A stretch of DNA of 64,000 bases from Macrostomum lignano (GCA_002269645.1 NIVC01000884.1:310001-374000); one strand, 5' to 3'. Counted from the first letter of the stretch, positions 1 through 51,002 are shown. Program-made: numbers and translations. Notes: generated by a model from the sequence alone, not told the origin.

Positions 1-3000
1 CAGAGAGTCAGTAGACACACAGAGAGTCAGTAGACACACAGAGAGTCAGTAGACACACAGAGAGTCAGTAGACACACAGAGCGTCAGTAGACACACAGAG
101 AGTCAGTAGACACACAGAGCGTCAGTAGACACACAGAGAGTCAGTAGACACACAGAGAGTCAGTAGACACACAGAGAGTCAGTAGACACACAGAGAGTCA
201 GTAGACACACAGAGAGTCAGTAGACACACAGAGAGTCAGTAGACACACAGAGAGTCAGTAGACACACAGAGAGTCAGTAGACACACAGAGAGTCAGTAGA
301 CACACAGAGAGTCAGTAGACACACAGAGAGTCAGTAGACACACAGAGAGTCAGTAGACACACAGAGAGTCAGTAGACACACAGAGCGTCAGTAGACACAC
401 AGAGAGTCAGTAGACACAGAGAGTCAGTAGACACAGAGAGTCAGTAGACACAGAGAGTCAGTAGACACAGAGAGTCAGTAGACACAGAGAGTCAGTAGAC
501 ACACAGAGAGTCAGTAGACACACAGAGAGTCAGTAGACACAGAGAGTCAGTAGACACAGAGAGTCAGTAGACACAGAGAGTCAGTAGACACAGAGAGTCA
601 GTAGACACACAGAGAGTCAGTAGACACAGAGAGTCAGTAGACACAGAGAGTCAGTAGACACAGAGAGTCAGTAGACACAGAGAGTCAGTAGACACAGAGA
701 GTCAGTAGACACAGAGAGTCAGTAGACACAGAGAGTCAGTAGACACAGAGAGTCAGTAGACACACAGAGAGTCAGTAGACACACAGAGAGTCAGTATACA
801 CACAGAGAGTCAGTAGACACACAGAGAGTCAGTAGACACACAGAGCGTCAGTAGACACACAGAGAGTCAGTAGACACAGAGAGTCAGTAGACACAGAGAG
901 TCAGTAGACACAGAGAGTCAGTAGACACAGAGAGTCAGTAGACACACAGAGCGTCAGTAGACACACAGAGAGTCAGTAGACACACAGAGAGTCAGTAGAC
1001 ACACAGAGAGTCAGTAGACACACAGAGAGTCAGTAGACACAGAGAGTCAGTAGACACAGAGAGTCAGTAGACACAGAGAGTCAGTAGACACAGAGAGTCA
1101 GTAGACACAGAGAGTCAGTAGACACAGAGAGTCAGTAGACACACAGAGAGTCAGTAGACACACAGAGAGTCAGTATACACACAGAGAGTCAGTAGACACA
1201 CAGAGCGTCAGTAGACACACAGAGAGTCAGTAGACACAGAGAGTCAGTAGACACAGAGAGTCAGTAGACACAGAGAGTCAGTAGACACAGAGAGTCAGTA
1301 GACACAGAGAGTCAGTAGACACACAGAGAGTCAGTAGACACACAGAGAGTCAGTAGACACACAGAGCGTCAGTAGACACACAGAGAGTCAGTAGACACAC
1401 AGAGCGTCAGTAGACACACAGAGAGTCAGTAGACACACAGAGCGTCAGTAGACACACAGAGAGTCAGTAGACACACAGAGAGTCAGTAGACACACAGAGC
1501 GTCAGTAGACACACAGAGAGTCAGTAGACACACAGAGAGTCAGTAGACACACAGAGCGTCAGTAGACACACAGAGAGTCAGTAGACACACAGAGAGTCAG
1601 TAGACACACAGAGAGTCAGTAGACACACAGAGAGTCAGTAGACACACAGAGAGTCAGTAGACACAGAGAGTCAGTAGACACACAGAGCGTCAGTAGACAC
1701 ACAGAGAGTCAGTAGACACACAGAGAGTCAGTAGACACACAGAGAGTCAGTAGACACACAGAGAGTCAGTAGACACACAGAGAGTCAGTAGACACACAGA
1801 GAGTCAGTAGACACACAGAGAGTCAGTAGACACACAGAGAGTCAGTAGACACAGAGAGTCAGTAGACACAGAGAGTCAGTAGACACACAGAGAGTCAGTA
1901 GACACACAGAGAGTCAGTAGACACACAGAGAGTCAGTAGACACACAGAGAGTCAGTAGACACACAGAGCGTCAGTAGACACACAGAGAGTCAGTAGACAC
2001 ACAGAGAGTCAGTAGACACACAGAGAGTCAGTAGACACACAGAGAGTCAGTAGACACACAGAGAGTCAGTAGACACACAGAGAGTCAGTAGACACACAGA
2101 GCGTCAGTAGACACACAGAGAGTCAGTAGACACACAGAGAGTCAGTAGACACACAGAGAGTCAGTAGACACACAGAGAGTCAGTAGACACACAGAGAGTC
2201 AGTAGACACACAGAGAGTCAGTAGACACAGAGAGTCAGTAGACACAGAGAGTCAGTAGACACAGAGAGTCAGTAGACACACAGAGAGTCAGTAGACACAC
2301 AGAGAGTCAGTAGACACACAGAGCGTCAGTAGACACACAGAGAGTCAGTAGACACACAGAGAGTCAGTAGACACACAGAGAGTCAGTAGACACACAGAGA
2401 GTCAGTAGACACACAGAGAGTCAGTAGACACACAGAGAGTCAGTAGACACAGAGAGTCAGTAGACACACAGAGAGTCAGTAGACACACAGAGAGTCAGTA
2501 GACACACAGAGAGTCAGTAGACACAGAGAGTCAGTAGACACAGAGAGTCAGTAGACACACAGAGAGTCAGTAGACACACAGAGAGTCAGTAGACACACAG
2601 AGAGTCAGTAGACACACAGAGAGTCAGTAGACACACAGAGAGTCAGTAGACACACAGAGCGTCAGTAGACACACAGAGAGTCAGTAGACACACAGAGCGT
2701 CAGTAGACACACAGAGAGTCAGTAGACACACAGAGAGTCAGTAGACACACAGAGAGTCAGTAGACACACAGAGCGTCAGTAGACACACAGAGAGTCAGTA
2801 GACACACAGAGAGTCAGTAGACACACAGAGAGTCAGTAGACACACAGAGAGTCAGTAGACACACAGAGCGTCAGTATACACACAGAGAGTCAGTAGACAC
2901 ACAGAGAGTCAGTAGACGCACAGAGAGTCAGTAGACACACAGAGAGTCAGTAGACACACAGAGAGTCAGTAGACACACAGAGCGTCAGTAGACACACAGA

Positions 3001-6000
3001 GAGTCAGTAGACACACAGAGAGTCAGTAGACACACAGAGAGTCAGTAGACACAGAGTCAGTAGACACAGAGTCAGTAGACACACAGAGAGTCAGTAGACA
3101 CACAGAGAGTCAGTAGACACACAGAGAGTCAGTAGACACACAGAGAGTCAGTAGACACACAGAGAGTCAGTAGACACACAGAGAGTCAGTAGACACACAG
3201 AGAGTCAGTAGACACACAGAGCGTCAGTAGACACACAGAGAGTCAGTAGACACACAGAGCGTCAGTAGACACACAGAGAGTCAGTAGACACACAGAGAGT
3301 CAGTAGACACACAGAGAGTCAGTAGACACACAGAGAGTCAGTAGACACAGAGTCAGTAGAGTACAGAGTCAGTAGACACACAGAGAGTCAGTAGACACAC
3401 AGAGAGTCAGTAGACACACAGAGAGTCAGTAGACACACAGAGAGTCAGTAGACACACAGAGAGTCAGTAGACACACAGAGAGTCAGTAGACACACAGAGC
3501 GTCAGTAGACACACAGAGAGTCAGTAGACACACAGAGAGTCAGTAGACACACAGAGAGTCAGTAGACACACAGAGAGTCAGTAGACACAGAGAGTCAGTA
3601 GACACAGAGAGTCAGTAGACACACAGAGAGTCAGTAGACACACAGAGAGTCAGTAGACACACAGAGAGTCAGTAGACACACAGAGAGTCAGTAGACACAC
3701 AGAGAGTCAGTAGACACACAGAGCGTCAGTAGACACACAGAGAGTCAGTAGACACACAGAGCGTCAGTAGACACACAGAGAGTCAGTAGACACACAGAGA
3801 GTCAGTAGACACACAGAGAGTCAGTAGACACACAGAGAGTCAGTAGACACACAGAGAGTCAGTAGACACACAGAGAGTCAGTAGACACACAGAGAGTCAG
3901 TAGACACACAGAGAGTCAGTAGACACACAGAGAGTCAGTAGACACACAGAGAGTCAGTAGACACACAGAGAGTCAGTAGACACACAGAGAGTCAGTAGAC
4001 ACACAGAGAGTCAGTAGACACACAGAGAGTCAGTAGACACACAGAGAGTCAGTAGACACACAGAGAGTCAGTAGACACACAGAGAGTCAGTAGACACACA
4101 GAGAGTCAGTAGACACAGAGTCAGTAGACACAGAGTCAGTAGACACACAGAGAGTCAGTAGACACACAGAGAGTCAGTAGACACACAGAGAGTCAGTAGA
4201 CACACAGAGAGTCAGTAGACACACAGAGAGTCAGTAGACACACAGAGAGTCAGTAGACACACAGAGAGTCAGTAGACACACAGTCAGTAGACGTACAGAG
4301 AGTCAGTAGACACACAGAGAGTCAGTAGACACAGAGTCAGTAGAGTACAGCGAGTCAGTAGACACACAGAGAGTCAGTAGACACACAGAGAGTCAGTAGA
4401 CACACAGAGAGTCAGTAGACACACAGAGAGTCAGTAGACACACAGAGAGTCAGTATACACACAGAGAGTCAGTAGACACACAGAGCGTCAGTAGACACAC
4501 AGAGAGTCAGTAGACACACAGAGAGTCAGTAGACACACAGAGAGTCAGTAGACACACAGAGAGTCAGTAGACACAGAGAGTCAGTAGACACACAGAGAGT
4601 CAGTAGACACACAGAGAGTCAGTAGACACACAGAGAGTCAGTAGACACACAGAGAGTCAGTAGACACACAGAGAGTCAGTAGACACACAGAGAGTCAGTA
4701 GACACACAGAGAGTCAGTAGACACACAGAGAGTCAGTAGACACACAGAGAGTCAGTAGACACACAGAGAGTCAGTAGACACACAGAGAGTCAGTAGACAC
4801 ACAGAGAGTCAGTAGACACACAGAGAGTCAGTAGACACACAGAGAGTCAGTAGACACACAGAGAGTCAGTAGACACACAGAGAGTCAGTAGACACACAGA
4901 GAGTCAGTAGACACACAGAGAGTCAGTAGACACACAGAGAGTCAGTAGACACACAGAGAGTCAGTAGACACACAGAGAGTCAGTAGACACACAGAGAGTC
5001 AGTAGACACACAGAGAGTCAGTAGACACACAGAGAGTCAGTAGACACACAGAGAGTCAGTAGACACACAGAGAGTCAGTAGACACACAGAGAGTCAGTAG
5101 ACACACAGAGAGTCAGTAGACACACAGAGAGTCAGTAGACACACAGAGAGTCAGTAGACACACAGAGAGTCAGTAGACACACAGAGAGTCAGTAGACACA
5201 CAGAGAGTCAGTAGACACACAGAGAGTCAGTAGACACACAGAGAGTCAGTAGACACACAGAGAGTCAGTAGACACACAGAGAGTCAGTAGACACACAGAG
5301 AGTCAGTAGACACACAGAGCGTCAGTAGACACACAGAGAGTCAGTAGACACACAGAGAGTCAGTAGACACACAGAGAGTCAGTAGACACACAGAGCGTCA
5401 GTAGACACACAGAGAGTCAGTAGACACACAGAGAGTCAGTAGACACACAGAGAGTCAGTAGACACACAGAGAGTCAGTAGACACACAGAGAGTCAGTAGA
5501 CACACAGAGAGTCAGTAGACACACAGAGAGTCAGTAGACACACAGAGAGTCAGTAGACACACAGAGAGTCAGTAGACACACAGAGAGTCAGTAGACACAC
5601 AGAGAGTCAGTAGACACACAGAGAGTCAGTAGACACACAGAGAGTCAGTAGACACACAGAGAGTCAGTAGAGTACAGCGAGTCAGTAGACACACAGAGAG
5701 TCAGTAGACACACAGAGAGTCAGTAGACACACAGAGAGTCAGTAGACACACAGAGAGTCAGTAGACACACAGAGAGTCAGTAGACACACAGAGAGTCAGT
5801 AGACACACAGAGAGTCAGTAGACACACAGAGAGTCAGTAGACACACAGAGAGTCAGTAGACACACAGAGAGTCAGTAGACACACAGAGAGTCAGTAGACA
5901 CACAGAGCGTCAGTAGACACACAGAGAGTCAGTAGACACACAGAGAGTCAGTAGACACACAGAGAGTCAGTAGACACACAGAGAGTCAGTAGACACACAG

Positions 6001-6671
6001 AGAGTCAGTAGACACACAGAGAGTCAGTAGACACACAGAGAGTCAGTAGACACACAGAGAGTCAGTAGACACACAGAGAGTCAGTAGACACACAGAGAGT
6101 CAGTAGACACACAGAGAGTCAGTAGACACACAGAGAGTCAGTAGACACACAGAGAGTCAGTAGACACACAAAGTCAGTAGACACACAGAGAGTCAGTAGA
6201 CACAGAGTCAGTAGAGTACAGCGAGTCAGTAGACACACAGAGAGTCAGTAGACACACAGAGAGTCAGTAGACACACAGAGAGTCAGTAGACACACAGAGA
6301 GTCAGTAGACACACAGAGAGTCAGTAGACACACAGAGCGTCAGTAGACACACAGAGAGTCAGTAGACACACAGAGCGTCAGTATACACACAGAGAGTCAG
6401 TAGACACACAGAGAGTCAGTAGACACACAGAGAGTCAGTAGACACACAGAGAGTCAGTAGACACACAGAGAGTCAGTAGACACACAGAGAGTCAGTAGAC
6501 ACACAGAGAGTCAGTAGACACACAGAGAGTCAGTAGACACACAGAGAGTCAGTAGACACACAGAGAGTCAGTAGACACACAGAGAGTCAGTAGACACACA
6601 GAGAGTCAGTAGACACACAGAGAGTCAGTAGACACACAGAGATTCAGTAGACACACAGAGAGTCAGTAGAC
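1..6671 (+). repeat. Large tandem satellite, 19-bp unit AGAGAGTCAGTAGACACAC (17- and 15-bp variants lacking CA/GA); runs off the window start
   Basis: Period 19 read directly (units start at 2, 21, 40, 59); no unique spacers. Confidence 0.99.
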
Positions 6672-7267
6672 AATAATTCTCTCGGTGCATAAATGTTTCT
6701 ATTTGTCTTTTTGCTTTCCTATTTCTGCAGCTCCTCCAGCACAGGTCGAACCTCAGTTAACCGCTGGGTTTCCAGCCTCTTTATTAGTCTTCCTCCTGCT
6801 AGCAGAGTCGTTCTGCCTCGCCGCAGGCCAGCAGGGTGCACAGGCGAGCATTTTGTCGAAAGCCTACTCAAGTAGAATTTCGACTCTCGTGCACCCAACC
6901 CGTCTGGCGCTGCCGAGGAGAATTTTGCTCCGCAGTCTTGACCCCCCTAGCGCGGTTGAGAATGAGGTCAACGAAAGAAACTAGGAAACAGTTGAGCAGT
7001 CATGTGAATTTCTATTTGCCCTCTCTGACCGGGGCCGGGGAGGAATGGGGTGGGATACGAGCTCCATCTGAACCCAGCCTTCACAAAGCCCCCAAGAACC
7101 CTACAGATTATATTTTCCGAGGCCGATGACTAAAATTTGCCAACCATAAATAATTCAGCCGTTTTGGCCGGAGCTGTGCCACGGTTTGAGCAAATTTGAG
7201 AAACTGCTGCGGACCGAGCATTTAGGCAAACATTGGTGATGTGTCCGAGCTGACCGAACCTCTGACT

Positions 7268-42500: not shown

Positions 42501-43393
42501 TGCGTGGAAAGCAGACTGGCGGCCTGGCAGTGTTGAGTTTCGGGCGCGCGAATTTGAATGTGGACTTTCTAAGAATTCTATTAGAATACATTTGCAATAA
42601 AATACAAACCCAGAACCCAGCAACTGAGGGTCTGGGAGGCTGGCCCAGCAACTGAGGGTCTGGGAGGCTGGCCCAGCAACTGAGGGTCTGGGAGGCTGGC
42701 CCAGCAACTGAGGATCTGGGAGGCTGACTGCTCAGCCGCAATATCCCAAGAAACCCCAGGCTACTCCAGTTCGCAGCGGCAGCAGACCGCAATGCAGCTC
42801 ACAACTTCCTCGGCAGACTTTTGAACGGCCTCGCTAGTAGACGAGTCGCCACCGGCGCTCTGAACTCGCCTGTGCCGCAGCACGGAGGTCGCCGTCGGGC
42901 CCGCATTCGACGTTGCGGTTGTCGCCGCCTTGGTTGCATCGTCGCTGACAGGCGCTGCTGCCTTGGACGCGGTAGCCGCCGAAGTCATGGACAGCAGCAG
43001 GGAGGACGGCAGCTTCGGCGGTGGCGGAGCCGCCAATCGGCGAATGCCGGTCACGTAGGCCTCAGGATCGAAGCCAGACTTGCCGAGCACCCGGCTGAGC
43101 TGGTCCGGGTGCAGCAAGCCGAACAGGTGCGCCAGAGAGTGGCGCCGGATTGCTTGGCGCCGACGTATGCGCCGAAGCCAACGCCGTCTGGAGCGCTGCT
43201 TTAACAGCGCGGATTCGGCAAACGACGGAGCTTCGTCTAATTCGTCTTTGTCGTCATCTTGATGGACTGCAGGCGGCGACAGCGGAGGAGGCGGCGGCGG
43301 AGGAGGCGGCATCTGCTGCTCCTCGGAATTACCGCCAGGGTTGCAGAGAGAATCTGCGCCGTCCCCGCTGCCGCCGTGAATTGCTGTTTGCAT
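39585..43393 (-). CDS. METTL14: m6A writer scaffold METTL14, about 569 aa; exons 43393-42803, 42499-42258 (alternative in-frame acceptor 42568), 41694-41391, 40157-39585
   Basis: [68 protein letters not shown] (EPPL, not the catalytic DPPW of METTL3), [53 protein letters not shown] and [15 protein letters not shown] introns with consistent phases. Confidence 0.95.
40280..41320. repeat. Composite 17/35-bp minisatellite CCCCATAATTCATGACATTTTCCAAGCTTCACAAT (METTL14 intron 3)
   Basis: Direct reading. Confidence 0.94.
41715..42200. repeat. Degenerate about 23-bp minisatellite GGGAAGATT(C/A)TGA..., drifting along the array (METTL14 intron 2)
   Basis: Direct reading. Confidence 0.88.
42610..42725. 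repeat. 28-bp GGGAGGCTGGCCCAGCAACTGAGG-family minisatellite (METTL14 intron 1)
   Basis: About 4 units matching the 31056-31765 unit. Confidence 0.93.
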
Positions 43394-43499
43394 GGGCGCT
43401 GCTTTCAGACATAAGTAAAATGTCAATATTGAAAACTTGATGAACAACTACTAACAGTAGTTAAATGCAGCAAAAAATAATCTAAAAAAACGAAATTCT

Positions 43500-43680
43500 G
43501 CCGATTCCACTGACTTCTGAGCAGAAGCAAGCGTGCCATTACTGTACGCAGGCGCGCACTCTACACGCGCTCACACAGGGTGTACAGCGGTCCTGACTTT
43601 ATAATCGTAAGGCATGTACACTCTCTGCGCCTTTGGGACTGGCACTCACGGGTTCGAATTGCACGACAACCCCAACGACT
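43500..43680 (-). mobile_element. Diverged fragment of the same SINE-like element (central part)
   Basis: The reverse complement contains GTGTACATGCCTTACGATTATAAAGTCAGGACCGCTGTACAC, compared with GTGTACATGTCAAACGATAAATAAAGTTAGGGCCGCTGTACAC in copy 1. Confidence 0.6.
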
Positions 43681-44365
43681 ACATATATATATTATTTCAA
43701 TAGAACATGTAGACAGGCCTCGGAGTGTCAATTGCAACAGCAAATTTTCAAACAGCAATCGACACGGTGTAAAGCCTGACAGCACAGCTGTTTAATATTG
43801 CATTGTTTAATCCTTCCAGGCCAGCTCATGATGGTAAAAAATAAGAAGGGCTGGCTTGGTACACACCAATGCAAAGCTGAGGTTTTGTAAGTTGCAACTT
43901 CATGAGGGTTCAGATAAGAGGATAAACCTCAGTATGGATTAGGTGAGATTTACGGGATGGATTAATGGAGATTTGCATGGAGGATTATGGAGGATCTCGA
44001 GACTGGATGATGGGAGATTCTAGGACTATTTTATGGGAGATTTTCAGGCTAGATTATGGGAAACTTTGGGGTTAGGATCATGGGAGATACGTACTGAGAC
44101 TGGATTAAGGAACAATCTGGAGGTCGGTCTATGGAAAATCTTAAGGCTAGATTAGGACAGAAATATGAAATTAATAAAATCCATGCATTGCCTAACAATA
44201 CCAGATAAGTGATTGAAAAATCAAACATTTAACAGAGTAGAACAGATTTTAAATTGAAATAATTTATTTATAAATGGCATTGAACCTGCTTAGATAAGCG
44301 AAAGCAAACAGGCGGATTAGACAGGTAAAAACTACAGTCGACTTAAGACAATCTTAGCTAATAGC

Positions 44366-45649
44366 TCAGGTTATACGATAATTAGCATAGGCCCTGTTCT
44401 CTTCGCATGTTTTGTGCAATTGCAATTTGGCGTGCACAGCTTTGCCTTCATTGTTGCTGGCATTCACCAGCTCCCTGGCCAGCGAGCGGTACAGGTGCTC
44501 CTTGGTGCCGCGAACGTTTGACGCAATTCGCAGAAATTTAAACGCTCGCATTTGACTCTCCGACTCGCGCAGCGGGCAGGGCACTTTGTATAGGAAGCCG
44601 CCGCGAAACACGTGCTTAATGATGAGCAGAGGTGAGCAGTTCTCAACGGCTTTGTGTATGACGCGAGTGGGGTCCACCTGCAGCGATGGTGAGACTTAGT
44701 TAGTGGAATTCTATGGCTGTAGAAAGACCGGGGATCTGGGAGGCTGGCCCAGCAACTAAGGATCTGGGAGGCTGTCTCAGCAGCTGAGGATCTGGGAGAG
44801 CGGTGGCCCAGGAACTAAAGATCTGGGAGGCTGTCTCAGCAGCTGAGGATCTGGGAGAGCGGTGGCTCAGCAACTAAGGATCTGGGAGGCTGTCTCAGCA
44901 GCTGAGGATCTGGGAGAGCGGTGGCCCAGCAACTAAGGATCTGGGAGGCTGTTTCAGCAGCTGAGGATCTGGGAGAGCGGTGGCCCAGCAACTAAGGATC
45001 TGGGAGGCTGTCTCAGCAGCTGAGGATCTGGGAGAGCGGTGGCCCAACAACTGAGGATTTGGGAGAGCGGTGGCCCAACAACTGAGGATCTGGGAGAGCA
45101 GTGGCCCAGCAACCCAGGATTTGGGAGGCTGGCCCAGCAGATCAGGATCTATTTGGTTGGGAAGATCTCGAAGGATTTTCCTACACCCAAAGATTTCCAA
45201 TCCCAGAGTGAACTAGCCTCAATGGACGCTTTCTCCTCAGGCGGCGCGGCGTTTCGCCGGGCCATCTGGATGTGCTTGATCTCTGCCATCATCTGGGTGA
45301 ACACGTCGCGCAATTTGTCTCGCTGGCCGCATTTGACAAAGTGTCCAGCAAAGCTGTTTACAATAGGATCGTAGTGCACGCTGAATATCTGGTACTTGCC
45401 AGGCGGCCGGACAGCTTTAGTCCGACGCTCGTCAGTTTTGGGAATGTGCCGCGTGAACAGGTGCGGGTCCGGGTCGGTCTTGGTCCATTCCGGAAACGGG
45501 CCGCGCTTGCGAACTTTCTGTAGAGGCGATTTGTGCCGCACCGGCTGCTGGCTGAGAATGGCGGCGGCGGCAGCGGTTGTTGCGGCCGAGCCCGAGCGAG
45601 ACTGACAGCCTAGCAGGCGGCTGGCATAGCCCAGTAGCAGCTGGGACAT
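44366..45649 (-). CDS. MRPS7: Mitochondrial ribosomal protein S7 (uS7m), about 247 aa; exons 45649-45218 and 44677-44366
   Basis: Transit-peptide-like N-terminus; SVHYDPIVNSFAGHFVKCG, VIHKAVENCSPLL..RGGFLYKVPCPL and LHKTCEENRAYANYR (uS7 C-terminal motif). The donor appears to be GC (see findings). Confidence 0.93.
44732..45140. repeat. 28-30-bp GGATCTGGGAGGCTG..CAGCAACTGA-family minisatellite (MRPS7 intron)
   Basis: Alternating variants of the 31056-31765 unit. Confidence 0.94.
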
Positions 45650-46052
45650 TTATCTCGGTTGTACCTCCGAATCGTTGTTTTTGTCTAGCTTATAGCTTGA
45701 GAATGGCTGCTCAGCCGAGAATGCTAGAATAATAATTAGTATGTTATTAATTAGTAGCTTTATTAACAACATTAATAGTAAAAATCAAACATTAATTATA
45801 TGCTAATTGAAAGAAACATTTTTGTATTCAAATATATCAATAAGTAATGAACGATAAGCGTGTTTATTTTTTAATACAATTCACACTTAATTAGAATGCT
45901 AAGCTTGATATTAGTAATTACAAGATATAAAGCATTGAGACAATAAATAAAGTATTACTAAGGGTCACCGGAAGGTCAAATCGTTAGGGGACCAATCATG
46001 CAGAGAATAATGAATAAGAGATGTGAGCACAGTGTGAGACAGCGAAACTGAG

Positions 46053-49000
46053 TCACTTGAGTCCAATACCAAAGTTAATAGCTAGCAGCAGTTTAGCGGT
46101 ATCCTGCTCATTGCTACGCATAGTCTGGTTCCGCTCCGACTGCTCATTCTCAAAGTCAGGCCTGGCCTGTTTCAATGAATTCAATGCGGTCTCGGCCGCT
46201 TTACGCATCTGCTCGGACGTTCTCGGCTGAGCTTCAATGTTAGTGCCGGATTTCTGAAACTCGTTGCGCCTGTGCTCAACGCTCAGGTCGAGTTTAGTTC
46301 GCAGATAGTGCGGCACACTGTCGTGATTAAGCAGGCCGAGACGGCCTTCTGTGTGGTTCAACAGGTGCTGATCGAGCTGCGGACTCAGGCCAATTGGTAG
46401 TAGAGCGAAATCATTTAAACGAAGCTGCTTCTCGTTGCGCAGGGTGCGGTGCAGGGCGGAGAGCTGGGAGACGCACTCGGCCAGGCAGTTCAGAATCTGT
46501 AGTTGGCGATTTGTTTGGCGTTGTTGAAGACAAAATTTATCTGACACTTGCTTCACCTCAGTAATTTAAATAAGTTTGAAACATCAGAATCTGACAACCT
46601 CAGAGAGAATCTGACAACCTCAGAGAGAATCTGACAACCTCAGAGAGAATCTGACAACCTCAGAGAGAATCTGACAACCTCAGAGAGAATCTGACAACCT
46701 CAGAGAATCTGACAACCTCAGAGAGAATCTGACAACCTCAGAGAGAATCTGACAACCTCAGAGAGAATCTGACAACCTCAGAGACAGAATCTGACAACCT
46801 CAGAGACAGAATCTGACAACCTCAGAGACAGAATCTGACAACCTCAGAGACAGAATCTGACAACCTCAGAGACAGAGTCTGGCAACCTGAGAGAGAGAAT
46901 CTGACAACCTCAGAGACAGAATCTGACAACCTCAGAGACAGAATCTGACAAACTCAGAGACAGAATCCGACAGCCTCAGAGACAGAATCTGACAACCTCA
47001 GAGACAGAATCTGACAACCTCAGAGACAGAATCTGACAACCTCAGAGACAGAGTCTGGCAACCTGAGAGAGAGAATCTGACAACCTCAGAGACAGAATCT
47101 GGCAACCTGAGAGAGAGAATCTGACAGCCTCAGAGACAGAATCTGACAACCTCAGAGACAGAATCCGACAGCCTCAGAGACAGAATCTGACAACCTCAGA
47201 GACAGAATCTGACAGCCTCAGAGACAGAATCTGACAACCTCAGAGACAGAATCCGACAGCCTCAGAGACAGAATCTGACAACCTCAGAGACAGAATCTGA
47301 CAACCTCAGAGACAGAATCTGGCAACCTGAGAGAGAGAATCTGACAGCCTCAGAGACAGAATCTGACAGCCTCAGAGACAGAATCCGACAGCCTCAGAGA
47401 CAGAATCTGACAACCTCAGAGACAGAATCTGACAACCTCAGAGACAGAATCTGACAACCTCAGAGACAGAATCCGACAGCCTCAGAGACAGAATCTGACA
47501 ACCTGAGAGAGAGAATCTGACAGCCTCAGAGACAGAATCTGACAACCTCAGAGACAGAATCCGACAGCCTCAGAGACAGAATCTGACAACCTCAGAGACA
47601 GAATCTGACAACCTCAGAGACAGAATCTGACAAACTCAGAGACAGAATCTGACAACCTCAGAGACAGAATCTGACAATCTCAGAGACAGAATCTGACAAC
47701 CTCAGAGACAGAATCTGGCAACCTGAGAGAGAGAATCTGGCAACCTGAGAGAGAGAATCTGACAGCCTCAGAGACAGAATCTGACAACCTCAGAGACAGA
47801 ATCCGACAGCCTCAGAGACAGAATCTGACAACCTCAGAGACAGAATCTGACAACCTCAGAGACAGAATCTGACAAACTCAGAGACAGAATCCGACAGCCT
47901 CAGAGACAGAATCTGACAACCTCAGAGACAGAATCTGACAACCTCAGAGACAGAATCTGACAATCTCAGAGACAGAATCTGACAACCTCAGAGACAGAAT
48001 CTGACAATCTCAGAGACAGAATCTGACAACCTCAGAGACAGAATCTGGCAACCTGAGAGAGAGAATCTGACAACCTCAGAGACAGAATCTGACAACCTCA
48101 GAGACAGAATCTGACAACCTCAGAGACAGAATCTGACAACCTCAGAGACAGAATCCGACAGCCTCAGAGACAGAATCTGACAACCTCAGAGACAGAATCT
48201 GACAATCTCAGAGACAGAATCTGACAACCTCAGAGACAGAATCTGGCAACCTGAGAGAGAGAATCTGACAGCCTCAGAGACAGAATCTGACAACCTCAGA
48301 GACAGAATCCGACAGCCTCAGAGACAGAATCTGACAACCTCAGAGACAGAATCTGACAACCTCAGAGAAAGAATCTGACAATCTCAGAGACAGAATCTGA
48401 CAGCCTCAGAGACAGAATCTGACAACCTCAGAGACAGAATCTGACAACCTCAGAGACAGAATCTGGCAACCTGAGAGAGAGAATCTGACAGCCTCAGAGA
48501 CAGAATCTGACAACCTCAGAGACAGAATCCGACAGCCTCAGAGACAGAATCTGACAACCTCAGAGACAGAATCTGACAACCTCAGAGACAGAATCTGACA
48601 AACTCAGAGACAGAATCCGACAGCCTCAGAGACAGAATCTGACAACCTCAGAGACAGAATCTGACAACCTCAGAGACAGAATCTGACAACCTCAGAGACA
48701 GAATCTGACAACTTCAGAGACAGAATCTGACAATCTCAGAGACAGAATCTGACAACCTCAGAGAGAATCTGACAACCTCAGAGACAGAATCTGACAACCT
48801 CAGAGAGAATCTGACAACCTCAGAGACAGAATCTGACAACCTCAGAGAGAGAATCTGACAGCCTCAGAGACAGAATCTGACAACCTCAGAGAGAGAATCT
48901 GACAACCTCAGAGAGAATCTGACAACCTCAGAGACAGAATCTGACAACCTCAGAGAGAATTTGACAACCTCAGAGACAGAATCTGACAACCTCAGAGAGA

Positions 49001-49713
49001 ATCTGACAACCTCAGAGACAGAATCTGACAACCTCAGAGAGAGAATCTGACAGCCTCAGAGACAGAATCTGACAACCTCAGAGAGAATCTGACAACCTCA
49101 GAGACAGAATCTGACAACCTCAGAGAGAATCTGACAACCTAAGAGAGAATCTGACAACCTCAGAGACAGAATCTGACAACCTCAGAGAGAATTTGACAAC
49201 CTCAGAGACAGAATCTGACAACCTCAGAGAGAGAATCTGACAGCCTCAGAGACAGAATCTGACAACCTCAGAGAGAGAATCTGACAACCTCAGAGACAGA
49301 ATCTGACAACCTCAGAGACAGAATCTGACAACCTCAGAGACAGAATCTGACAACCTCAGAGACAGAATCTGACAACCTCAGAGAGAATCTGACAACCTCA
49401 GAGACAGAATCTGACAACCTCAGAGACAGAATCTGACAACCTCAGAGACAATCCGACAACCCTTAGTTAGCCAGGGAAATCGAAACCACATGACAGACAA
49501 GCGCAAACAAAGAATCAGGACAATTGCCGCCAGTCACCTTACCTCAGGCCAGGTGGCCGGACGCTTCTCGTCAACTTTAGCAATCAAGGAGCACAGTGTT
49601 CGCCGAATACCGCGCAGTCGGTCGATCAGCTCGTCAAGACAATCGTCCGAGCCGCGATTTCCGCCGCCGCCTTCACGACCGGCCAGCTGTTGATGCTGGA
49701 ACGGATCCGCCAT
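46053..49713 (-). CDS. MED8: Mediator subunit MED8, 204 aa; exons 49713-49543 and 46496-46053
   Basis: TWPE|ILNCLAECVSQLSALHRTLRNEK, LLPIGLSPQLDQHLLNHTEGRLGLLNHDSVPHYLRTKLDLSVE and DTAKLLLAINFGIGL match the MED8 motifs WPSVLD, TEGR, HxxVPxxLRTKPD and LVAAVxFGKGL. Donor GTAAGG, CAG acceptor, phase 0. The start codon lies inside the MED31 CDS. Confidence 0.9.
46585..49460. repeat. 20/22-bp minisatellite AGAATCTGACAACCTCAGAG(AC) filling the MED8 intron
   Basis: Direct reading; about 2.9 kb. Confidence 0.98.
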
Positions 49714-51002
49714 CGACGCCCTGCTGCTGCTGCTGCTCCTGCTGCTCCTGCAGTTGCTGATTGGCCTGTCTAGTTAGCAACCGATGCCGCTTAGGTATAT
49801 AGTGCTGCCAATGCAATAGGATCTGCTCGTCAACTTCCCTAGCTAGGCCTGTTTTAGCGATGTCTTTGCGAAACTGCTGATGCTGCAGTAGATCCAGCAG
49901 CTGCAGACAGAATGGGTACTTGATGTACTTGACGTAGTCCGCCTCTTTCCAGTACTGCAGGTAGCTTAAGTAGTTGATGAATTCGCGTTTCTCAAAGAAG
50001 CGACGCTGGGCTAAGAAGTTCAGGTAATTCGGATTGCCCAGGCACTGGACGAACTCTAGTTCAACCTGCGGGGTGGGATGTGGTTGGGATGAATAAACAT
50101 AGGCTGTTTAATCCTTTGTGTATCCATAGTTAGATGGGCGATTTTATGGGATAGATGGGCGATTCTATGGGGTAGATGGGCGATTCTATGGGGTAGATGG
50201 GCGATTCTATGGGGTAGATAGGCGATTCTATGGTATAGATAGGCGATTCTATGGTATAGATGGGCGATTTTATGGGATAGATGGGCGATTCTATGGGATA
50301 GATGGGCGATTCTATGGGATAGATGGGCGATTCTATGGGATAGATGGGCGATTCTATGGGATAGATGGGCGATTCTATGGGATAGATGGGCGATTCTATG
50401 GTATAGATGGGCGATTTTATGGGATAGATGGGCGATTCTATGGGATAGATGGGCGATTCTATGGGATAGATGGGCGATTCTATGGGATGATGGGCGATTC
50501 TATGGAGTAGATGGGCGATTCTATGGGGTAGATAGGCGATTCTATGGTATAGATAGGCGATTTTATGGGATGGATGGGCGATTCTATGGGATAGATGGGC
50601 GATTCTATGGTACAGATAGGCGATTTTATGGGATCTATGGGCGATTCTATGGGGTAGATGGGCGATTCTATGGGGTAGATGGGCGATTCTATGGTAGAGA
50701 TAGGCGATTTTATGGGATGGATGGGCGATTTTATGGGATGGATGGGCGATTCTTTGGGATAAATGGGCGATTCTATGGGAAAGGGATATGTATTCTGTTC
50801 CACAGGTTACAGCGGCCACCTGTACCCAAGTAGGTATTACCTGAAAGCGCTGTCGCTCTTCGTTATCAGCTCGAGTCTGCTGCAACAGCTGATGCTGGTG
50901 GTGCTGATGATGCTGGAGGCTGGCAGCGGCGGCTGCGGCGGAGAAGTGCGACGTCGGCAAATTGGAATGCGGCGGTAGCGGTGGCGGCTGGTTGGGCTTC
51001 AT
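49673..51002 (-). CDS. MED31: Mediator subunit MED31 (SOH1), 184 aa; exons 51002-50841 and 50065-49673
   Basis: EERQRFQ|VELEFVQCLGNPNYLNFLAQRRFF..FINYLSYLQYWKEADYVKYIKYPFCLQLLDLLQ..EQILLHWQHY, then a poly-Q tail and TGA at 49675-49673. GT-AG phase 0. Exon 2 is absent from the ORF track. Confidence 0.96.
50130..50780. repeat. 21-bp minisatellite GATAGATGGGCGATTCTATGG (MED31 intron)
   Basis: Direct reading. Confidence 0.96.

What the first reader, a model, noticed from the sequence alone, without database searches (positions are those of the whole stretch)
46053..51002. Two Mediator subunits, MED31 and MED8, encoded as overlapping same-strand ORFs: a bicistronic, frameshift-fusion or alternatively spliced Mediator locus
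Seen: MED31 ends with TGA at 49675-49673. The only in-frame ATG for MED8 exon 1 is at 49713, inside MED31 (..cag cag ggc gtc gAT Ggc..), giving a 41-nt overlap in the +1 frame. The MED8 frame is closed upstream by TAA at 49776-49774, so there is no earlier start. By eye there is no minus-strand AATAAA/ATTAAA between the MED31 stop and the MED8 stop (46053); the first AATAAA is at about 45868-45863. Known: MED31 (middle-module knob) and MED8 (head module) are normally unlinked and lie near each other at the Pol II CTD-binding cleft. Inferred options: (a) one mRNA makes both subunits by reinitiation or leaky scanning; (b) a +1 ribosomal frameshift in the CAG-rich stretch 49773-49676 gives a MED31-polyQ-MED8 fusion tethering middle to head; (c) the shared phase-0 exon 1 is spliced to alternative acceptors TTCCAG|49695 or CAACAG|49686, which are in the MED8 frame, so one promoter yields either subunit; (d) SL trans-splicing inside MED31; (e) a 1-nt assembly error hiding a true fusion gene. 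The MED8 ORF also stops right after FGIGLK and lacks the long C-terminal tail of vertebrate MED8.
Basis: partly seen in the sequence, partly recalled or inferred. Interest (0 to 1): 0.92.

Follow-up and report, generated by a model that had tools for sequence, protein, structure and literature searches.

The report
Overlapping MED31–MED8 dicistronic flatworm genes
In the flatworm Macrostomum lignano, two Mediator subunit genes lie head to tail with a 41-base coding overlap inside a multi-gene transcription unit; they encode separate proteins, not a fusion, and the upstream gene has no internal AUG, which suggests that ribosomes reach the second gene by scanning through the first.

Summary
The window is Macrostomum lignano Mlig_3_7, identical to NIVC01000884.1. 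On the minus strand, MED31 (184 aa, Pfam 6e-37) ends at TGA 49675-49673. MED8 (204 aa, Pfam 7e-28, identical to PAA75450.1/PAA85684.1) starts at ATG 49713. The overlap is 41 nt and MED8 is in the +1 frame.

The same junction is present in all three genomic copies. A cDNA-like contig from a relative with saturated synonymous divergence has a 35-nt overlap at the same frame offset. This excludes an assembly indel and argues against a frameshift fusion.

The pair heads a same-strand cluster, MED31-MED8-mRPS7-METTL14. A published de novo transcript (RNA1509_3511, 3507 nt, flagged TRANSSPLICED) carries both MED31 and mRPS7 hits, so this is a polycistronic unit of a kind already known in this species.

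New here: spliced MED31 mRNA has no ATG in any frame for 511 nt between its own start and the MED8 start (shuffle P=0.0014). The relative also has none. The MED31 AUG context is weak, and no AAUAAA separates the two ORFs.

Best reading (about 0.5): a dicistronic mRNA on which MED8 is reached by leaky scanning or delayed reinitiation, as in MOCS2A/B. Main rival (about 0.3): SL trans-splicing inside MED31. Interest is moderate.

The parts
50841..51002 (-). MED31 exon 1. ATG at 51002-51000 in the context cgcggCacATGA. Encodes a 54-aa low-complexity N-terminus. Phase-0 donor.
50066..50840 (-). MED31 intron (GT..AG). Contains a 21-nt tandem repeat at 50131-50780.
49673..50065 (-). MED31 exon 2 coding part: Med31/SOH1 domain, poly-Q tail, and TGA at 49675-49673.
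49714..50999 (-). AUG-free path. In the spliced mRNA (exonic parts 50999-50841 and 50065-49714, 511 nt) there is no ATG in any frame between the MED31 start and the MED8 start.
49673..49713 (-). 41-nt dual-coding overlap, covering the MED31 C-terminus and the MED8 N-terminus. MED8 is in the +1 frame.
49543..49713 (-). MED8 exon 1. ATG at 49713 in the context cgTcgATGG. This is the start of the deposited CDS PAA75450.1/PAA85684.1.
46497..49542 (-). MED8 intron (GT..AG). Almost entirely a 22-nt tandem repeat (46585-49461, about 133 copies). Its length differs between the three genomic copies.
46053..46496 (-). MED8 exon 2 coding part, ending ...FGIGLK and TGA at 46055-46053.
49696..49701 (-). 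TTCCAG, an exact match to the published M. lignano trans-splice acceptor motif [T/C]TNCAG. It lies 13-18 nt downstream of the first base of the MED8 ATG. An SL-donated AUG here would be in the MED8 frame. This is a candidate only.
   Evidence: motif from PMC8629364
49748..49753 (-). CTGCAG, the second motif match, with its splice point 34 nt upstream of the MED8 ATG. An SL AUG here would be in the MED31 frame. This is a candidate only.
45863..45875 (-). The first canonical poly(A) signals downstream of both ORFs: ATTAAA at 45875-45870 and AATAAA at 45868-45863. A further AATAAA lies at 45764-45759.
44366..45649 (-). Third gene of the cluster, mitochondrial ribosomal protein S7 (247 aa, PAA75449.1/PAA85685.1). 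Exons are 45649-45218 and 44677-44366, joined across a GC-AG intron.

Best explanation
MED31 and MED8 are two separate proteins encoded by the first two cistrons of a same-strand, SL-capped polycistronic transcription unit (MED31-MED8-mRPS7-METTL14) of Macrostomum lignano.

The MED31 stop lies 41 nt downstream of the MED8 start, and no poly(A) signal intervenes. Any complete MED31 mRNA must therefore run into MED8, and most simply ends at the MED8 poly(A) site near 45850. This gives a mature dicistronic MED31-MED8 mRNA.

MED31 is read from the first genomic AUG, which sits in a weak context (C at -3, A at +4). Small subunits that pass this AUG meet no other AUG for 511 nt. They may pass it by leaky scanning, or because they have not yet regained initiation competence after the short uORF opened by the AUG at the end of the spliced leader. 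They then start at the MED8 AUG.

Shown here: the gene models, the overlap, its conservation, the AUG-free path, the missing poly(A) signal, and RNA contigs or transcripts that span the ORFs. Inferred: that the dicistronic RNA is the translated MED8 template, and the initiation mechanism.
For: (1) AUG-free path.
- Only the MED31 start precedes the MED8 ATG in the spliced mRNA of all three M. lignano copies.
- The 498 nt of MED31 sequence upstream of the MED8 ATG in the orthologous contig L001 also have no ATG.
- Dinucleotide shuffles expect 4.9 ATG in M. lignano (P(0)=0.0014) and 2.7 in L001 (P(0)=0.038).
- ATG density in the neighbouring MED8 and mRPS7 CDS is 16 per 1353 nt. My Poisson estimate from that density expects about 6 ATG in 511 nt.
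- MED31 has no internal Met. Only 4 of 120 homologues share that, and Macrostomum has F/I, H and L at the three positions where other species most often have Met.
- Synonymous sites between the two species are saturated (pS 0.68-0.74). The shared absence of out-of-frame ATGs is therefore not simple inheritance.

(2) The first AUG lacks both a purine at -3 and a G at +4. The MED8 AUG has G at +4, and the orthologue also has A at -3.

(3) There is no AATAAA or ATTAAA between the MED31 stop and the MED8 stop.

(4) L001 is an intron-less 1160-nt contig running from the MED31 CDS through the MED8 stop into the 3' UTR.

(5) Grudniewska et al. 2016 (PMC5173321, supplementary file 2) list Cluster-16441.0 as 'MED31; MRPS7'.
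- Transcript RNA1509_3511 is 3507 nt, flagged TRANSSPLICED, has Pfam SOH1, and its best UniRef hit is mitochondrial S7.
- I infer that it runs through MED8, which lies between those genes in all three genomic copies.

(6) GenBank holds the MED8 CDS but no MED31 protein for any of the three copies. That is what a one-CDS-per-transcript pipeline would give for a dicistronic gene, because it keeps the longer ORF (204 versus 184 aa).
Against: - No read-level data were available, so translation of MED8 from the dicistronic RNA is not demonstrated.
- SL trans-splicing is very common in this species: 30-39% of genes, and 45% of the genes with human homologues. Mapping of SL reads found about four times more sites than de novo assemblies (PMC5730564, PMC8629364). 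The absence of an assembled SL-MED8 transcript is therefore weak evidence.
- With the amino-acid sequence held fixed, the absence of out-of-frame ATGs is unremarkable (P=0.23 and 0.19). The signal rests mainly on the Met-less protein.
- L001 has a low ATG density overall.
- The AUG-free exon 2 would equally suit a MED8 mRNA whose 5' end lies inside MED31 exon 2.
- The species' own start-codon consensus was not determined. Only about six starts were seen.
- If the mRNA is SL-capped, the SL's own AUG comes first, which complicates simple leaky scanning.
- MED31 may be missing from GenBank because of the authors' repeat filter.
Confidence: 0.5

Rival explanations
1. Conventional operon resolution. 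The precursor is SL trans-spliced at an AG inside the last 10-80 nt of the MED31 CDS (CAG tract 49760-49720, or TTCCAG|49695 with the SL's terminal AUG in frame). This gives a monocistronic SL-MED8 mRNA. MED31 is made only from precursors that escape this trans-splicing, so each precursor yields one protein or the other.
For: [quoted passage not shown]
- The cluster has operon geometry: spacers of -41, 403 and about 957 nt on one strand.
- MED8, mRPS7 and METTL14 share the transcriptional-unit name prefix Mlig030536.
- There are two exact [T/C]TNCAG motif matches, at 49747 and 49695. The SL AUG would be in the MED8 frame at 49695.
- 17 AG dinucleotides lie in the 120 nt upstream of the MED8 ATG.
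Against: - This model does not predict the AUG-free MED31 mRNA.
- Every acceptor in the CAG tract (49756-49720) puts the SL AUG in the MED31 frame. That creates a 16-28-codon uORF ending 41 nt past the MED8 AUG.
- The deposited MED8 CDS starts at 49713, so the annotated transcript does not begin at 49695.
- There is no pyrimidine tract upstream of the ATG in M. lignano.
- About 0.3 motif matches are expected by chance in such a stretch (my estimate).
- No MED8-only transcript appears in the published cluster.
Confidence: 0.3
2. Simple gene overlap. MED8 has its own transcription start inside MED31 exon 2 or at the end of the MED31 intron, and MED31 is polyadenylated at a non-canonical site within MED8 exon 1 or its intron.
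For: - An AUG-free exon 2 (352 nt) would also give a clean 5' UTR for such an mRNA.
- A k-mer assembly such as L001 cannot tell overlapping mRNAs from one molecule.
Against: - No promoter-like AT-rich segment lies inside the GC-rich exon 2.
- ATGs are present at the 3' end of the intron (50128-50095).
- No canonical poly(A) signal follows the MED31 stop. Only GATAAA at 46541 and ACTAAA at 46298 were found.
- A published SL-capped transcript spans MED31 to mRPS7.
Confidence: 0.08
3. Alternative cis-splicing from the shared phase-0 MED31 exon 1 donor (50841) to TTCCAG|49695 or CAACAG|49686. MED8 would then be made with the 54-aa MED31 N-terminus as a leader.
For: - The frames are compatible.
- Flatworm acceptors are often shared between cis- and trans-splicing (PMC12582326).
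- The orthologue has AG|CAT at the homologous place, also in frame.
Against: - The MED8 genomic ATG and the residues after it are conserved in both species. That would be unnecessary under this model.
- The MED8 match to the human chain begins only 9 residues from the human N-terminus, at query residue 24, so no long leader is expected.
- The orthologous acceptor context is purine-rich.
- This model does not explain the AUG-free path.
Confidence: 0.03
4. Termination-reinitiation. Ribosomes finishing MED31 at 49673 move back 41 nt to the MED8 AUG.
For: Both ORFs are on one RNA and overlap.
Against: - From general knowledge, reinitiation after a 184-codon ORF and a 35-41-nt backward move is outside what known stop-start systems do.
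- No structured element is present (z=+0.85).
- There is no Rfam match.
Confidence: 0.02
5. A programmed +1 frameshift in the CAG tract gives a MED31-polyQ-MED8 fusion, or a 1-nt assembly error hides a true fusion gene.
For: - The MED8 frame is open for 21 codons upstream of its ATG.
- A fused model exists in UniProt (A0A1I8I420).
Against: - The junction is identical in frame in three independently assembled genomic copies. One of them carries a 3-nt deletion and substitutions.
- It is also in frame in a species with saturated synonymous divergence (overlap 35 nt, same offset).
- The MED8 ATG is conserved.
- The UniProt fusion depends on an impossible 7-nt 'intron', GTTCCAG.
- There is no stimulatory structure or known element.
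Confidence: 0.015

Closest known systems
Human MOCS2 (MOCS2A/MOCS2B), a dicistronic mRNA with overlapping ORFs read by leaky scanning
   Same: - Two subunits of one complex are encoded on one transcript.
- The ORFs are in different frames and overlap by tens of nt (77 bp in MOCS2, 41 here).
- Leaky scanning is given as the mechanism for the downstream ORF (PMC9607355).
   Different: - The proteins are unrelated.
- MED31-MED8 sits inside an SL trans-spliced polycistronic unit with two further genes.
- The mechanism here is inferred from sequence only.
- From memory, alternative first exons have also been proposed for MOCS2.
SL trans-spliced operons of flatworms, nematodes and tunicates, including C. 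elegans SL1-type and Ciona operons that lack intercistronic DNA
   Same: - A same-strand cluster is transcribed as one precursor, and the transcript is SL-capped.
- The spacers to the third and fourth genes are short.
- Ab initio predictors fuse the genes into chimeric models, a known artefact (PMC2760879; PMC12582326; here A0A1I8I420).
   Different: - In known types, the upstream poly(A) site precedes or abuts the downstream acceptor. In S. mansoni all 45 analysed pairs had at least 5 bp between them.
- Here the coding regions overlap by 41 nt, so one precursor cannot yield both mature monocistronic mRNAs.
Viral leaky-scanning mRNAs with an AUG-poor first cistron (from memory: HIV-1 vpu-env, and ORFs I-III of rice tungro bacilliform virus)
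   Same: A weak first AUG is followed by a long stretch without AUGs up to the next start.
   Different: This is a cellular locus. The viral examples are recalled from memory and were not checked here.

Membership tests
MED31 / SOH1 (Pfam PF05669) | Full-length match to the Med31 domain above the curated cut-off | tested here: met
   126 bits against a cut-off of 25, residues 51-143 matching profile positions 2-94 of 95. Human MED31 scores 5e-42.
MED8 (Pfam PF10232) | Match to the Med8 domain above the curated cut-off | tested here: met
   98.3 bits against a cut-off of 28.3, residues 25-204. Human MED8 scores 2.4e-21 over residues 10-191.
MED8 (metazoan form) | Conserved C-terminal tail ending in the ..IKTNIK..HPY.. 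motif | tested here: not met
   The ORF stops at the position equivalent to human residue 192. The orthologous cDNA-like contig stops at the same place. The motif was not found in 43000-46200 by tblastn or in any frame of the window.
SL trans-spliced operon | Same-strand genes with short spacers, covered by one precursor transcript | tested here: met
   Spacers are -41, 403 and about 957 nt. Published transcript RNA1509_3511 carries MED31 and mRPS7 hits and is flagged TRANSSPLICED.
SL trans-spliced operon | The downstream gene (MED8) receives the spliced leader at its own acceptor | not testable with these tools
   Only motif matches at 49747 and 49695 were found. No read data were available. 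No gene-level record was found in the papers or supplements searched.
SL trans-spliced operon | [quoted passage not shown] | tested here: not met
   The MED31 stop (49673) lies downstream of the MED8 ATG (49713). There is no AATAAA or ATTAAA before 45875.
Leaky-scanning dicistronic mRNA (MOCS2 type) | No AUG in any frame between the first and second start codons | tested here: met
   No ATG in 511 nt in three copies, and none in 498 nt of the orthologue. Shuffle P is 0.0014 and 0.038.
Leaky-scanning dicistronic mRNA (MOCS2 type) | First AUG in a suboptimal context | tested here: inconclusive
   C at -3 and A at +4 is weak by the general Kozak rule. The species' own consensus was not established.
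Leaky-scanning dicistronic mRNA (MOCS2 type) | Both ORFs on one mature, translated mRNA molecule, with initiation at the second AUG | not testable with these tools
   L001 and RNA1509_3511 are short-read assemblies. They are compatible with this feature but do not prove single molecules or translation.
Programmed +1 ribosomal frameshift fusion | The downstream ORF lacks its own start, and a conserved shift site or stimulator is present | tested here: not met
   The ATG is conserved in both species. The fold z-score is +0.85. There is no Rfam hit.

The most novel reading that the evidence does not exclude
Their ratio would be set at the level of translation. Ribosomes that bypass the weak MED31 AUG, possibly after the short uORF opened by the spliced leader's own AUG, scan an AUG-free MED31 coding region kept free by selection, including loss of every internal methionine. 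They then initiate MED8. This would be a second animal case of the MOCS2 principle, and the first one embedded in an SL operon.
Probability: 0.45. Interest if true: 0.6.

Novelty: new variant of a known kind. Interest (0 to 1): 0.5.

Why it matters
Operons resolved by spliced-leader trans-splicing are usually described as giving one mature mRNA per gene. A conserved pair whose coding regions overlap cannot be resolved that way.

If MED8 is read by scanning through an AUG-free MED31, translation-level coupling of two subunits of one complex exists inside an animal operon. It would also mean that selection can remove every methionine from a conserved protein to keep the scanning path open.

There are practical consequences too.
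- M. lignano MED31 is absent as a separate protein from GenBank and UniProt, and UniProt carries a four-gene chimera. Orthology and completeness surveys for Mediator in flatworms may therefore be misled.
- M. lignano has working transgenesis, so the mechanism can be tested directly.

Tried and rejected
- **Assembly error or true fusion.** Rejected by three genomic copies and the orthologue.
- **Frameshift signals.** No structure and no Rfam family.
- **MED31-MED8 linkage elsewhere.**
  - The Clonorchis and Heterobilharzia MED31 loci show no MED8 within 10 kb, either annotated or by tblastn (best E=0.43, a chance-level match).
  - Two other invertebrate MED8 contigs have unrelated neighbours on the opposite strand.
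  - No MED31 homologue among the 120 listed carries a Med8 domain.
- **More Macrostomum orthologues.** A profile search found none beyond L001.
- **Gene-level SL or poly(A) evidence.** The locus names Mlig030536 and Mlig020072 and the term MED8 were absent from the papers and stored supplements searched.
- **Using the gene numbers (g2/g3/g8...) to infer whether the annotators cut between MED31 and MED8.** The numbers are not positional and include filtered isoforms, so this was inconclusive.
- **The acceptor motif as evidence.** Two matches in about 150 nt are not clearly above chance.
- **SL sequence in the window.** None found.
- **Locating the SL acceptor upstream of MED31.** No motif match. 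Every candidate gives a short SL-AUG uORF that ends before the MED31 AUG.
- **A separate exon for the missing MED8 C-terminal motif.** Not found.
- **ATG-free runs in raw genomic sequence as a background.** Unusable, because long tandem repeats dominate them.

Full report
**Origin and gene models**

The minus strand of the window is identical, with 0 mismatches over 15,661 nt, to NIVC01000884.1 of the Macrostomum lignano Mlig_3_7 assembly, GCA_002269645.1.

- MED31 has exon 1 at 51002-50841, a GT..AG intron at 50840-50066, and exon 2 at 50065-49673. It encodes 184 aa.
- MED8 has exon 1 at 49713-49543, a GT..AG intron at 49542-46497, and exon 2 at 46496-46053. It encodes 204 aa.
- Pfam confirms both: Med31 at 6.1e-37 and Med8 at 6.8e-28. 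Both also align to the human Mediator chains.
- The MED8 model is exactly the deposited protein PAA75450.1/PAA85684.1.

**Check of the observation**

- The TGA is at 49675-49673 and the ATG at 49713.
- The overlap is 41 nt, with MED8 in the +1 frame.
- TAA at 49776-49774 closes the MED8 frame upstream.
- There is no AATAAA or ATTAAA until 45875/45868.
- The two AG sites at 49695 and 49686 are in the MED8 frame.

**Not an artefact and not a fusion**

M. lignano carries three copies of the locus (L002, L003 = the window, L004). All three have the same junction. L004 differs by a 3-nt deletion and several substitutions just upstream, yet keeps both frames.

L001 is a Logan contig from run SRR30276804, 1160 nt long. 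It lacks both introns, so it is most simply a transcript. It comes from a relative of M. lignano.
- The MED31 domain is 90% identical and MED8 is 75% identical at the protein level.
- Synonymous sites are saturated (pS 0.68-0.74).
- MED31 stops at 531-533 and MED8 starts at 499. The overlap is 35 nt at the same frame offset.
- The MED8 ATG and the following residues (MA..HQ.L.AGRE.GGGG) are conserved.

There is no unusual RNA structure (z=+0.85) and no Rfam match. The only fused 'MED31-MED8' protein in the databases is UniProt A0A1I8I420. This is an ab initio chimera of all four neighbouring genes, and it bridges the frame change with an impossible 7-nt intron, GTTCCAG. Such chimeras are a recognised artefact at operons (PMC2760879; PMC12582326).

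**Context**

MED31, MED8, mitochondrial ribosomal protein S7 and a METTL14-like gene follow each other on one strand. The spacers are -41, 403 and about 957 nt, in all three copies.

In M. lignano, 30-39% of genes receive a 35-nt spliced leader that ends in AUG. About 15% of genes lie in operons, and about 7% of assembled transcripts are polycistronic precursors (PMC8629364; PMC5730564).

Supplementary file 2 of Grudniewska et al. 2016 (PMC5173321) lists a neoblast-enriched cluster named 'MED31; MRPS7'.
- Its transcript RNA1509_3511 is 3507 nt, flagged TRANSSPLICED, and has a Med31 Pfam hit and a best UniRef hit to ribosomal protein S7.
- Spanning those two genes needs at least 2276 nt of spliced RNA, and the path passes through MED8.
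- The locus is therefore a polycistronic unit of a known kind.

Linkage of MED31 and MED8 was not seen elsewhere. Two trematode MED31 loci and two other invertebrate MED8 loci were checked.

**How MED8 is expressed**

The usual operon scheme requires the upstream mRNA to be polyadenylated before the downstream trans-splice site. That cannot apply here, because MED31 ends 41 nt after MED8 begins and no poly(A) signal intervenes.
- In the spliced mRNA, the MED31 start is the only ATG in any frame before the MED8 ATG. This is 511 nt without an ATG, in all three copies.
- The 498 nt preceding the MED8 ATG in L001 also have none.
- Dinucleotide shuffles expect 4.9 ATG (P(0)=0.0014) in M. lignano and 2.7 (P(0)=0.038) in L001.
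- The neighbouring CDSs have one ATG per 85 nt.
- Most of the signal is at the protein level. MED31 has no internal methionine, and only 4 of 120 homologues share this.
- With the protein sequence fixed, the absence of out-of-frame ATGs is unremarkable in either species (P=0.23 and 0.19).
- The MED31 AUG has C at -3 and A at +4. The MED8 AUG has G at +4, and in L001 it also has A at -3.

These are the classic marks of a dicistronic mRNA read by leaky scanning. The closest cellular precedent is MOCS2A/B (PMC9607355).

If the mRNA is SL-capped, the SL's own AUG opens a short uORF that ends before the MED31 AUG at every candidate acceptor. Delayed reinitiation could then contribute to bypass of the MED31 AUG.

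Two indirect observations point the same way.
- No MED8-only transcript appears in the published cluster.
- GenBank has MED8 but no MED31 for any copy. A pipeline keeping the longest ORF of a dicistronic transcript would give this result. The authors' repeat filter could also explain it.

**Main rival**

The main rival is SL trans-splicing inside MED31. It has a high prior in this species. Two exact matches to the published acceptor motif [T/C]TNCAG lie at 49747 and 49695, and the SL AUG would be in the MED8 frame at 49695.

Several points count against it.
- Two motif matches are about what chance would give.
- The deposited CDS starts upstream of 49695.
- Acceptors in the CAG tract put the SL AUG in the MED31 frame, which creates a uORF over the MED8 start.
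- The model does not predict the AUG-free path.

Trans-splicing and leaky scanning are not mutually exclusive. I could not obtain read-level data, so the choice between them remains an inference. My estimates are:

| Mechanism | Estimate |
|---|---|
| Scanning-dependent translation from the dicistronic mRNA | about 0.5 |
| Internal trans-splicing | about 0.3 |
| Internal promoter | 0.08 |
| Each of the remaining options | 0.03 or less |

**Verdict**

The fusion and error readings are rejected. The locus is a variant of known polycistronic organisation, and the evidence that the two Mediator subunits are coupled at translation is suggestive but unproven.

Interest is moderate (0.5). The case is a clean one that can be tested by experiment, but it is not a new category.

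Noticed in passing
window 49673-51002 (-); L002, L004: M. lignano MED31 is not present as a separate protein in the 5.8-billion-protein collection or in GenBank; the best hits are arthropod MED31 at 51-65% identity. It appears only inside the chimeric UniProt model A0A1I8I420 (1171 aa: MED31+MED8+mRPS7+METTL14), which uses a 7-nt pseudo-intron.
   Followed up: yes
window 46053-46100 (-); L001 1090-1122: Macrostomum MED8 ends at ..FGIGLK (..LGVGLK in the L001 relative). It lacks the C-terminal tail with the IKTNIK..HPY motif that is conserved in 11 of the 13 other MED8 homologues retrieved and in human MED8. From memory, this tail tethers MED18/MED20. The motif was not found elsewhere in the window.
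   Followed up: partly
window 46585-49461: A 2.9-kb array of a 22-nt tandem repeat (about 133 copies, 92% matches) fills the MED8 intron. Its length differs greatly between the three genomic copies: the MED8 gene is 3661, 2369 and 1448 bp.
   Followed up: partly
window 50131-50780: A 21-nt tandem repeat (31 copies) fills the MED31 intron. The intron length also differs between copies: 775, 733 and 383 nt.
   Followed up: partly
window 44678-45217 (-): The deposited 247-aa mRPS7 protein is reproduced only with a GC-AG intron (donor GAG|GCTAGT, acceptor CTGCAG). The intron contains a 31-nt tandem repeat (45000-45150).
   Followed up: yes
window 1-6692: A 6.7-kb array of a 19-nt tandem repeat (CAGAGAGTCAGTAGACACA) lies at the start of the window. 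Many other ATG-free runs of 0.7-1.9 kb suggest further satellite-like arrays across the window.
   Followed up: no
L002 3285-3791; L004 2395-3460: Two different SR-protein-like genes (RRM plus CCHC zinc knuckle plus RS tail) lie a few kb upstream of MED31 in the paralogous copies. No gene is annotated in the corresponding 6 kb of the window copy.
   Followed up: no
protein P0123: A Clavelina lepadiformis (tunicate) protein model combines a Med31 domain with a homeobox domain. It may be another operon-derived chimeric prediction.
   Followed up: no
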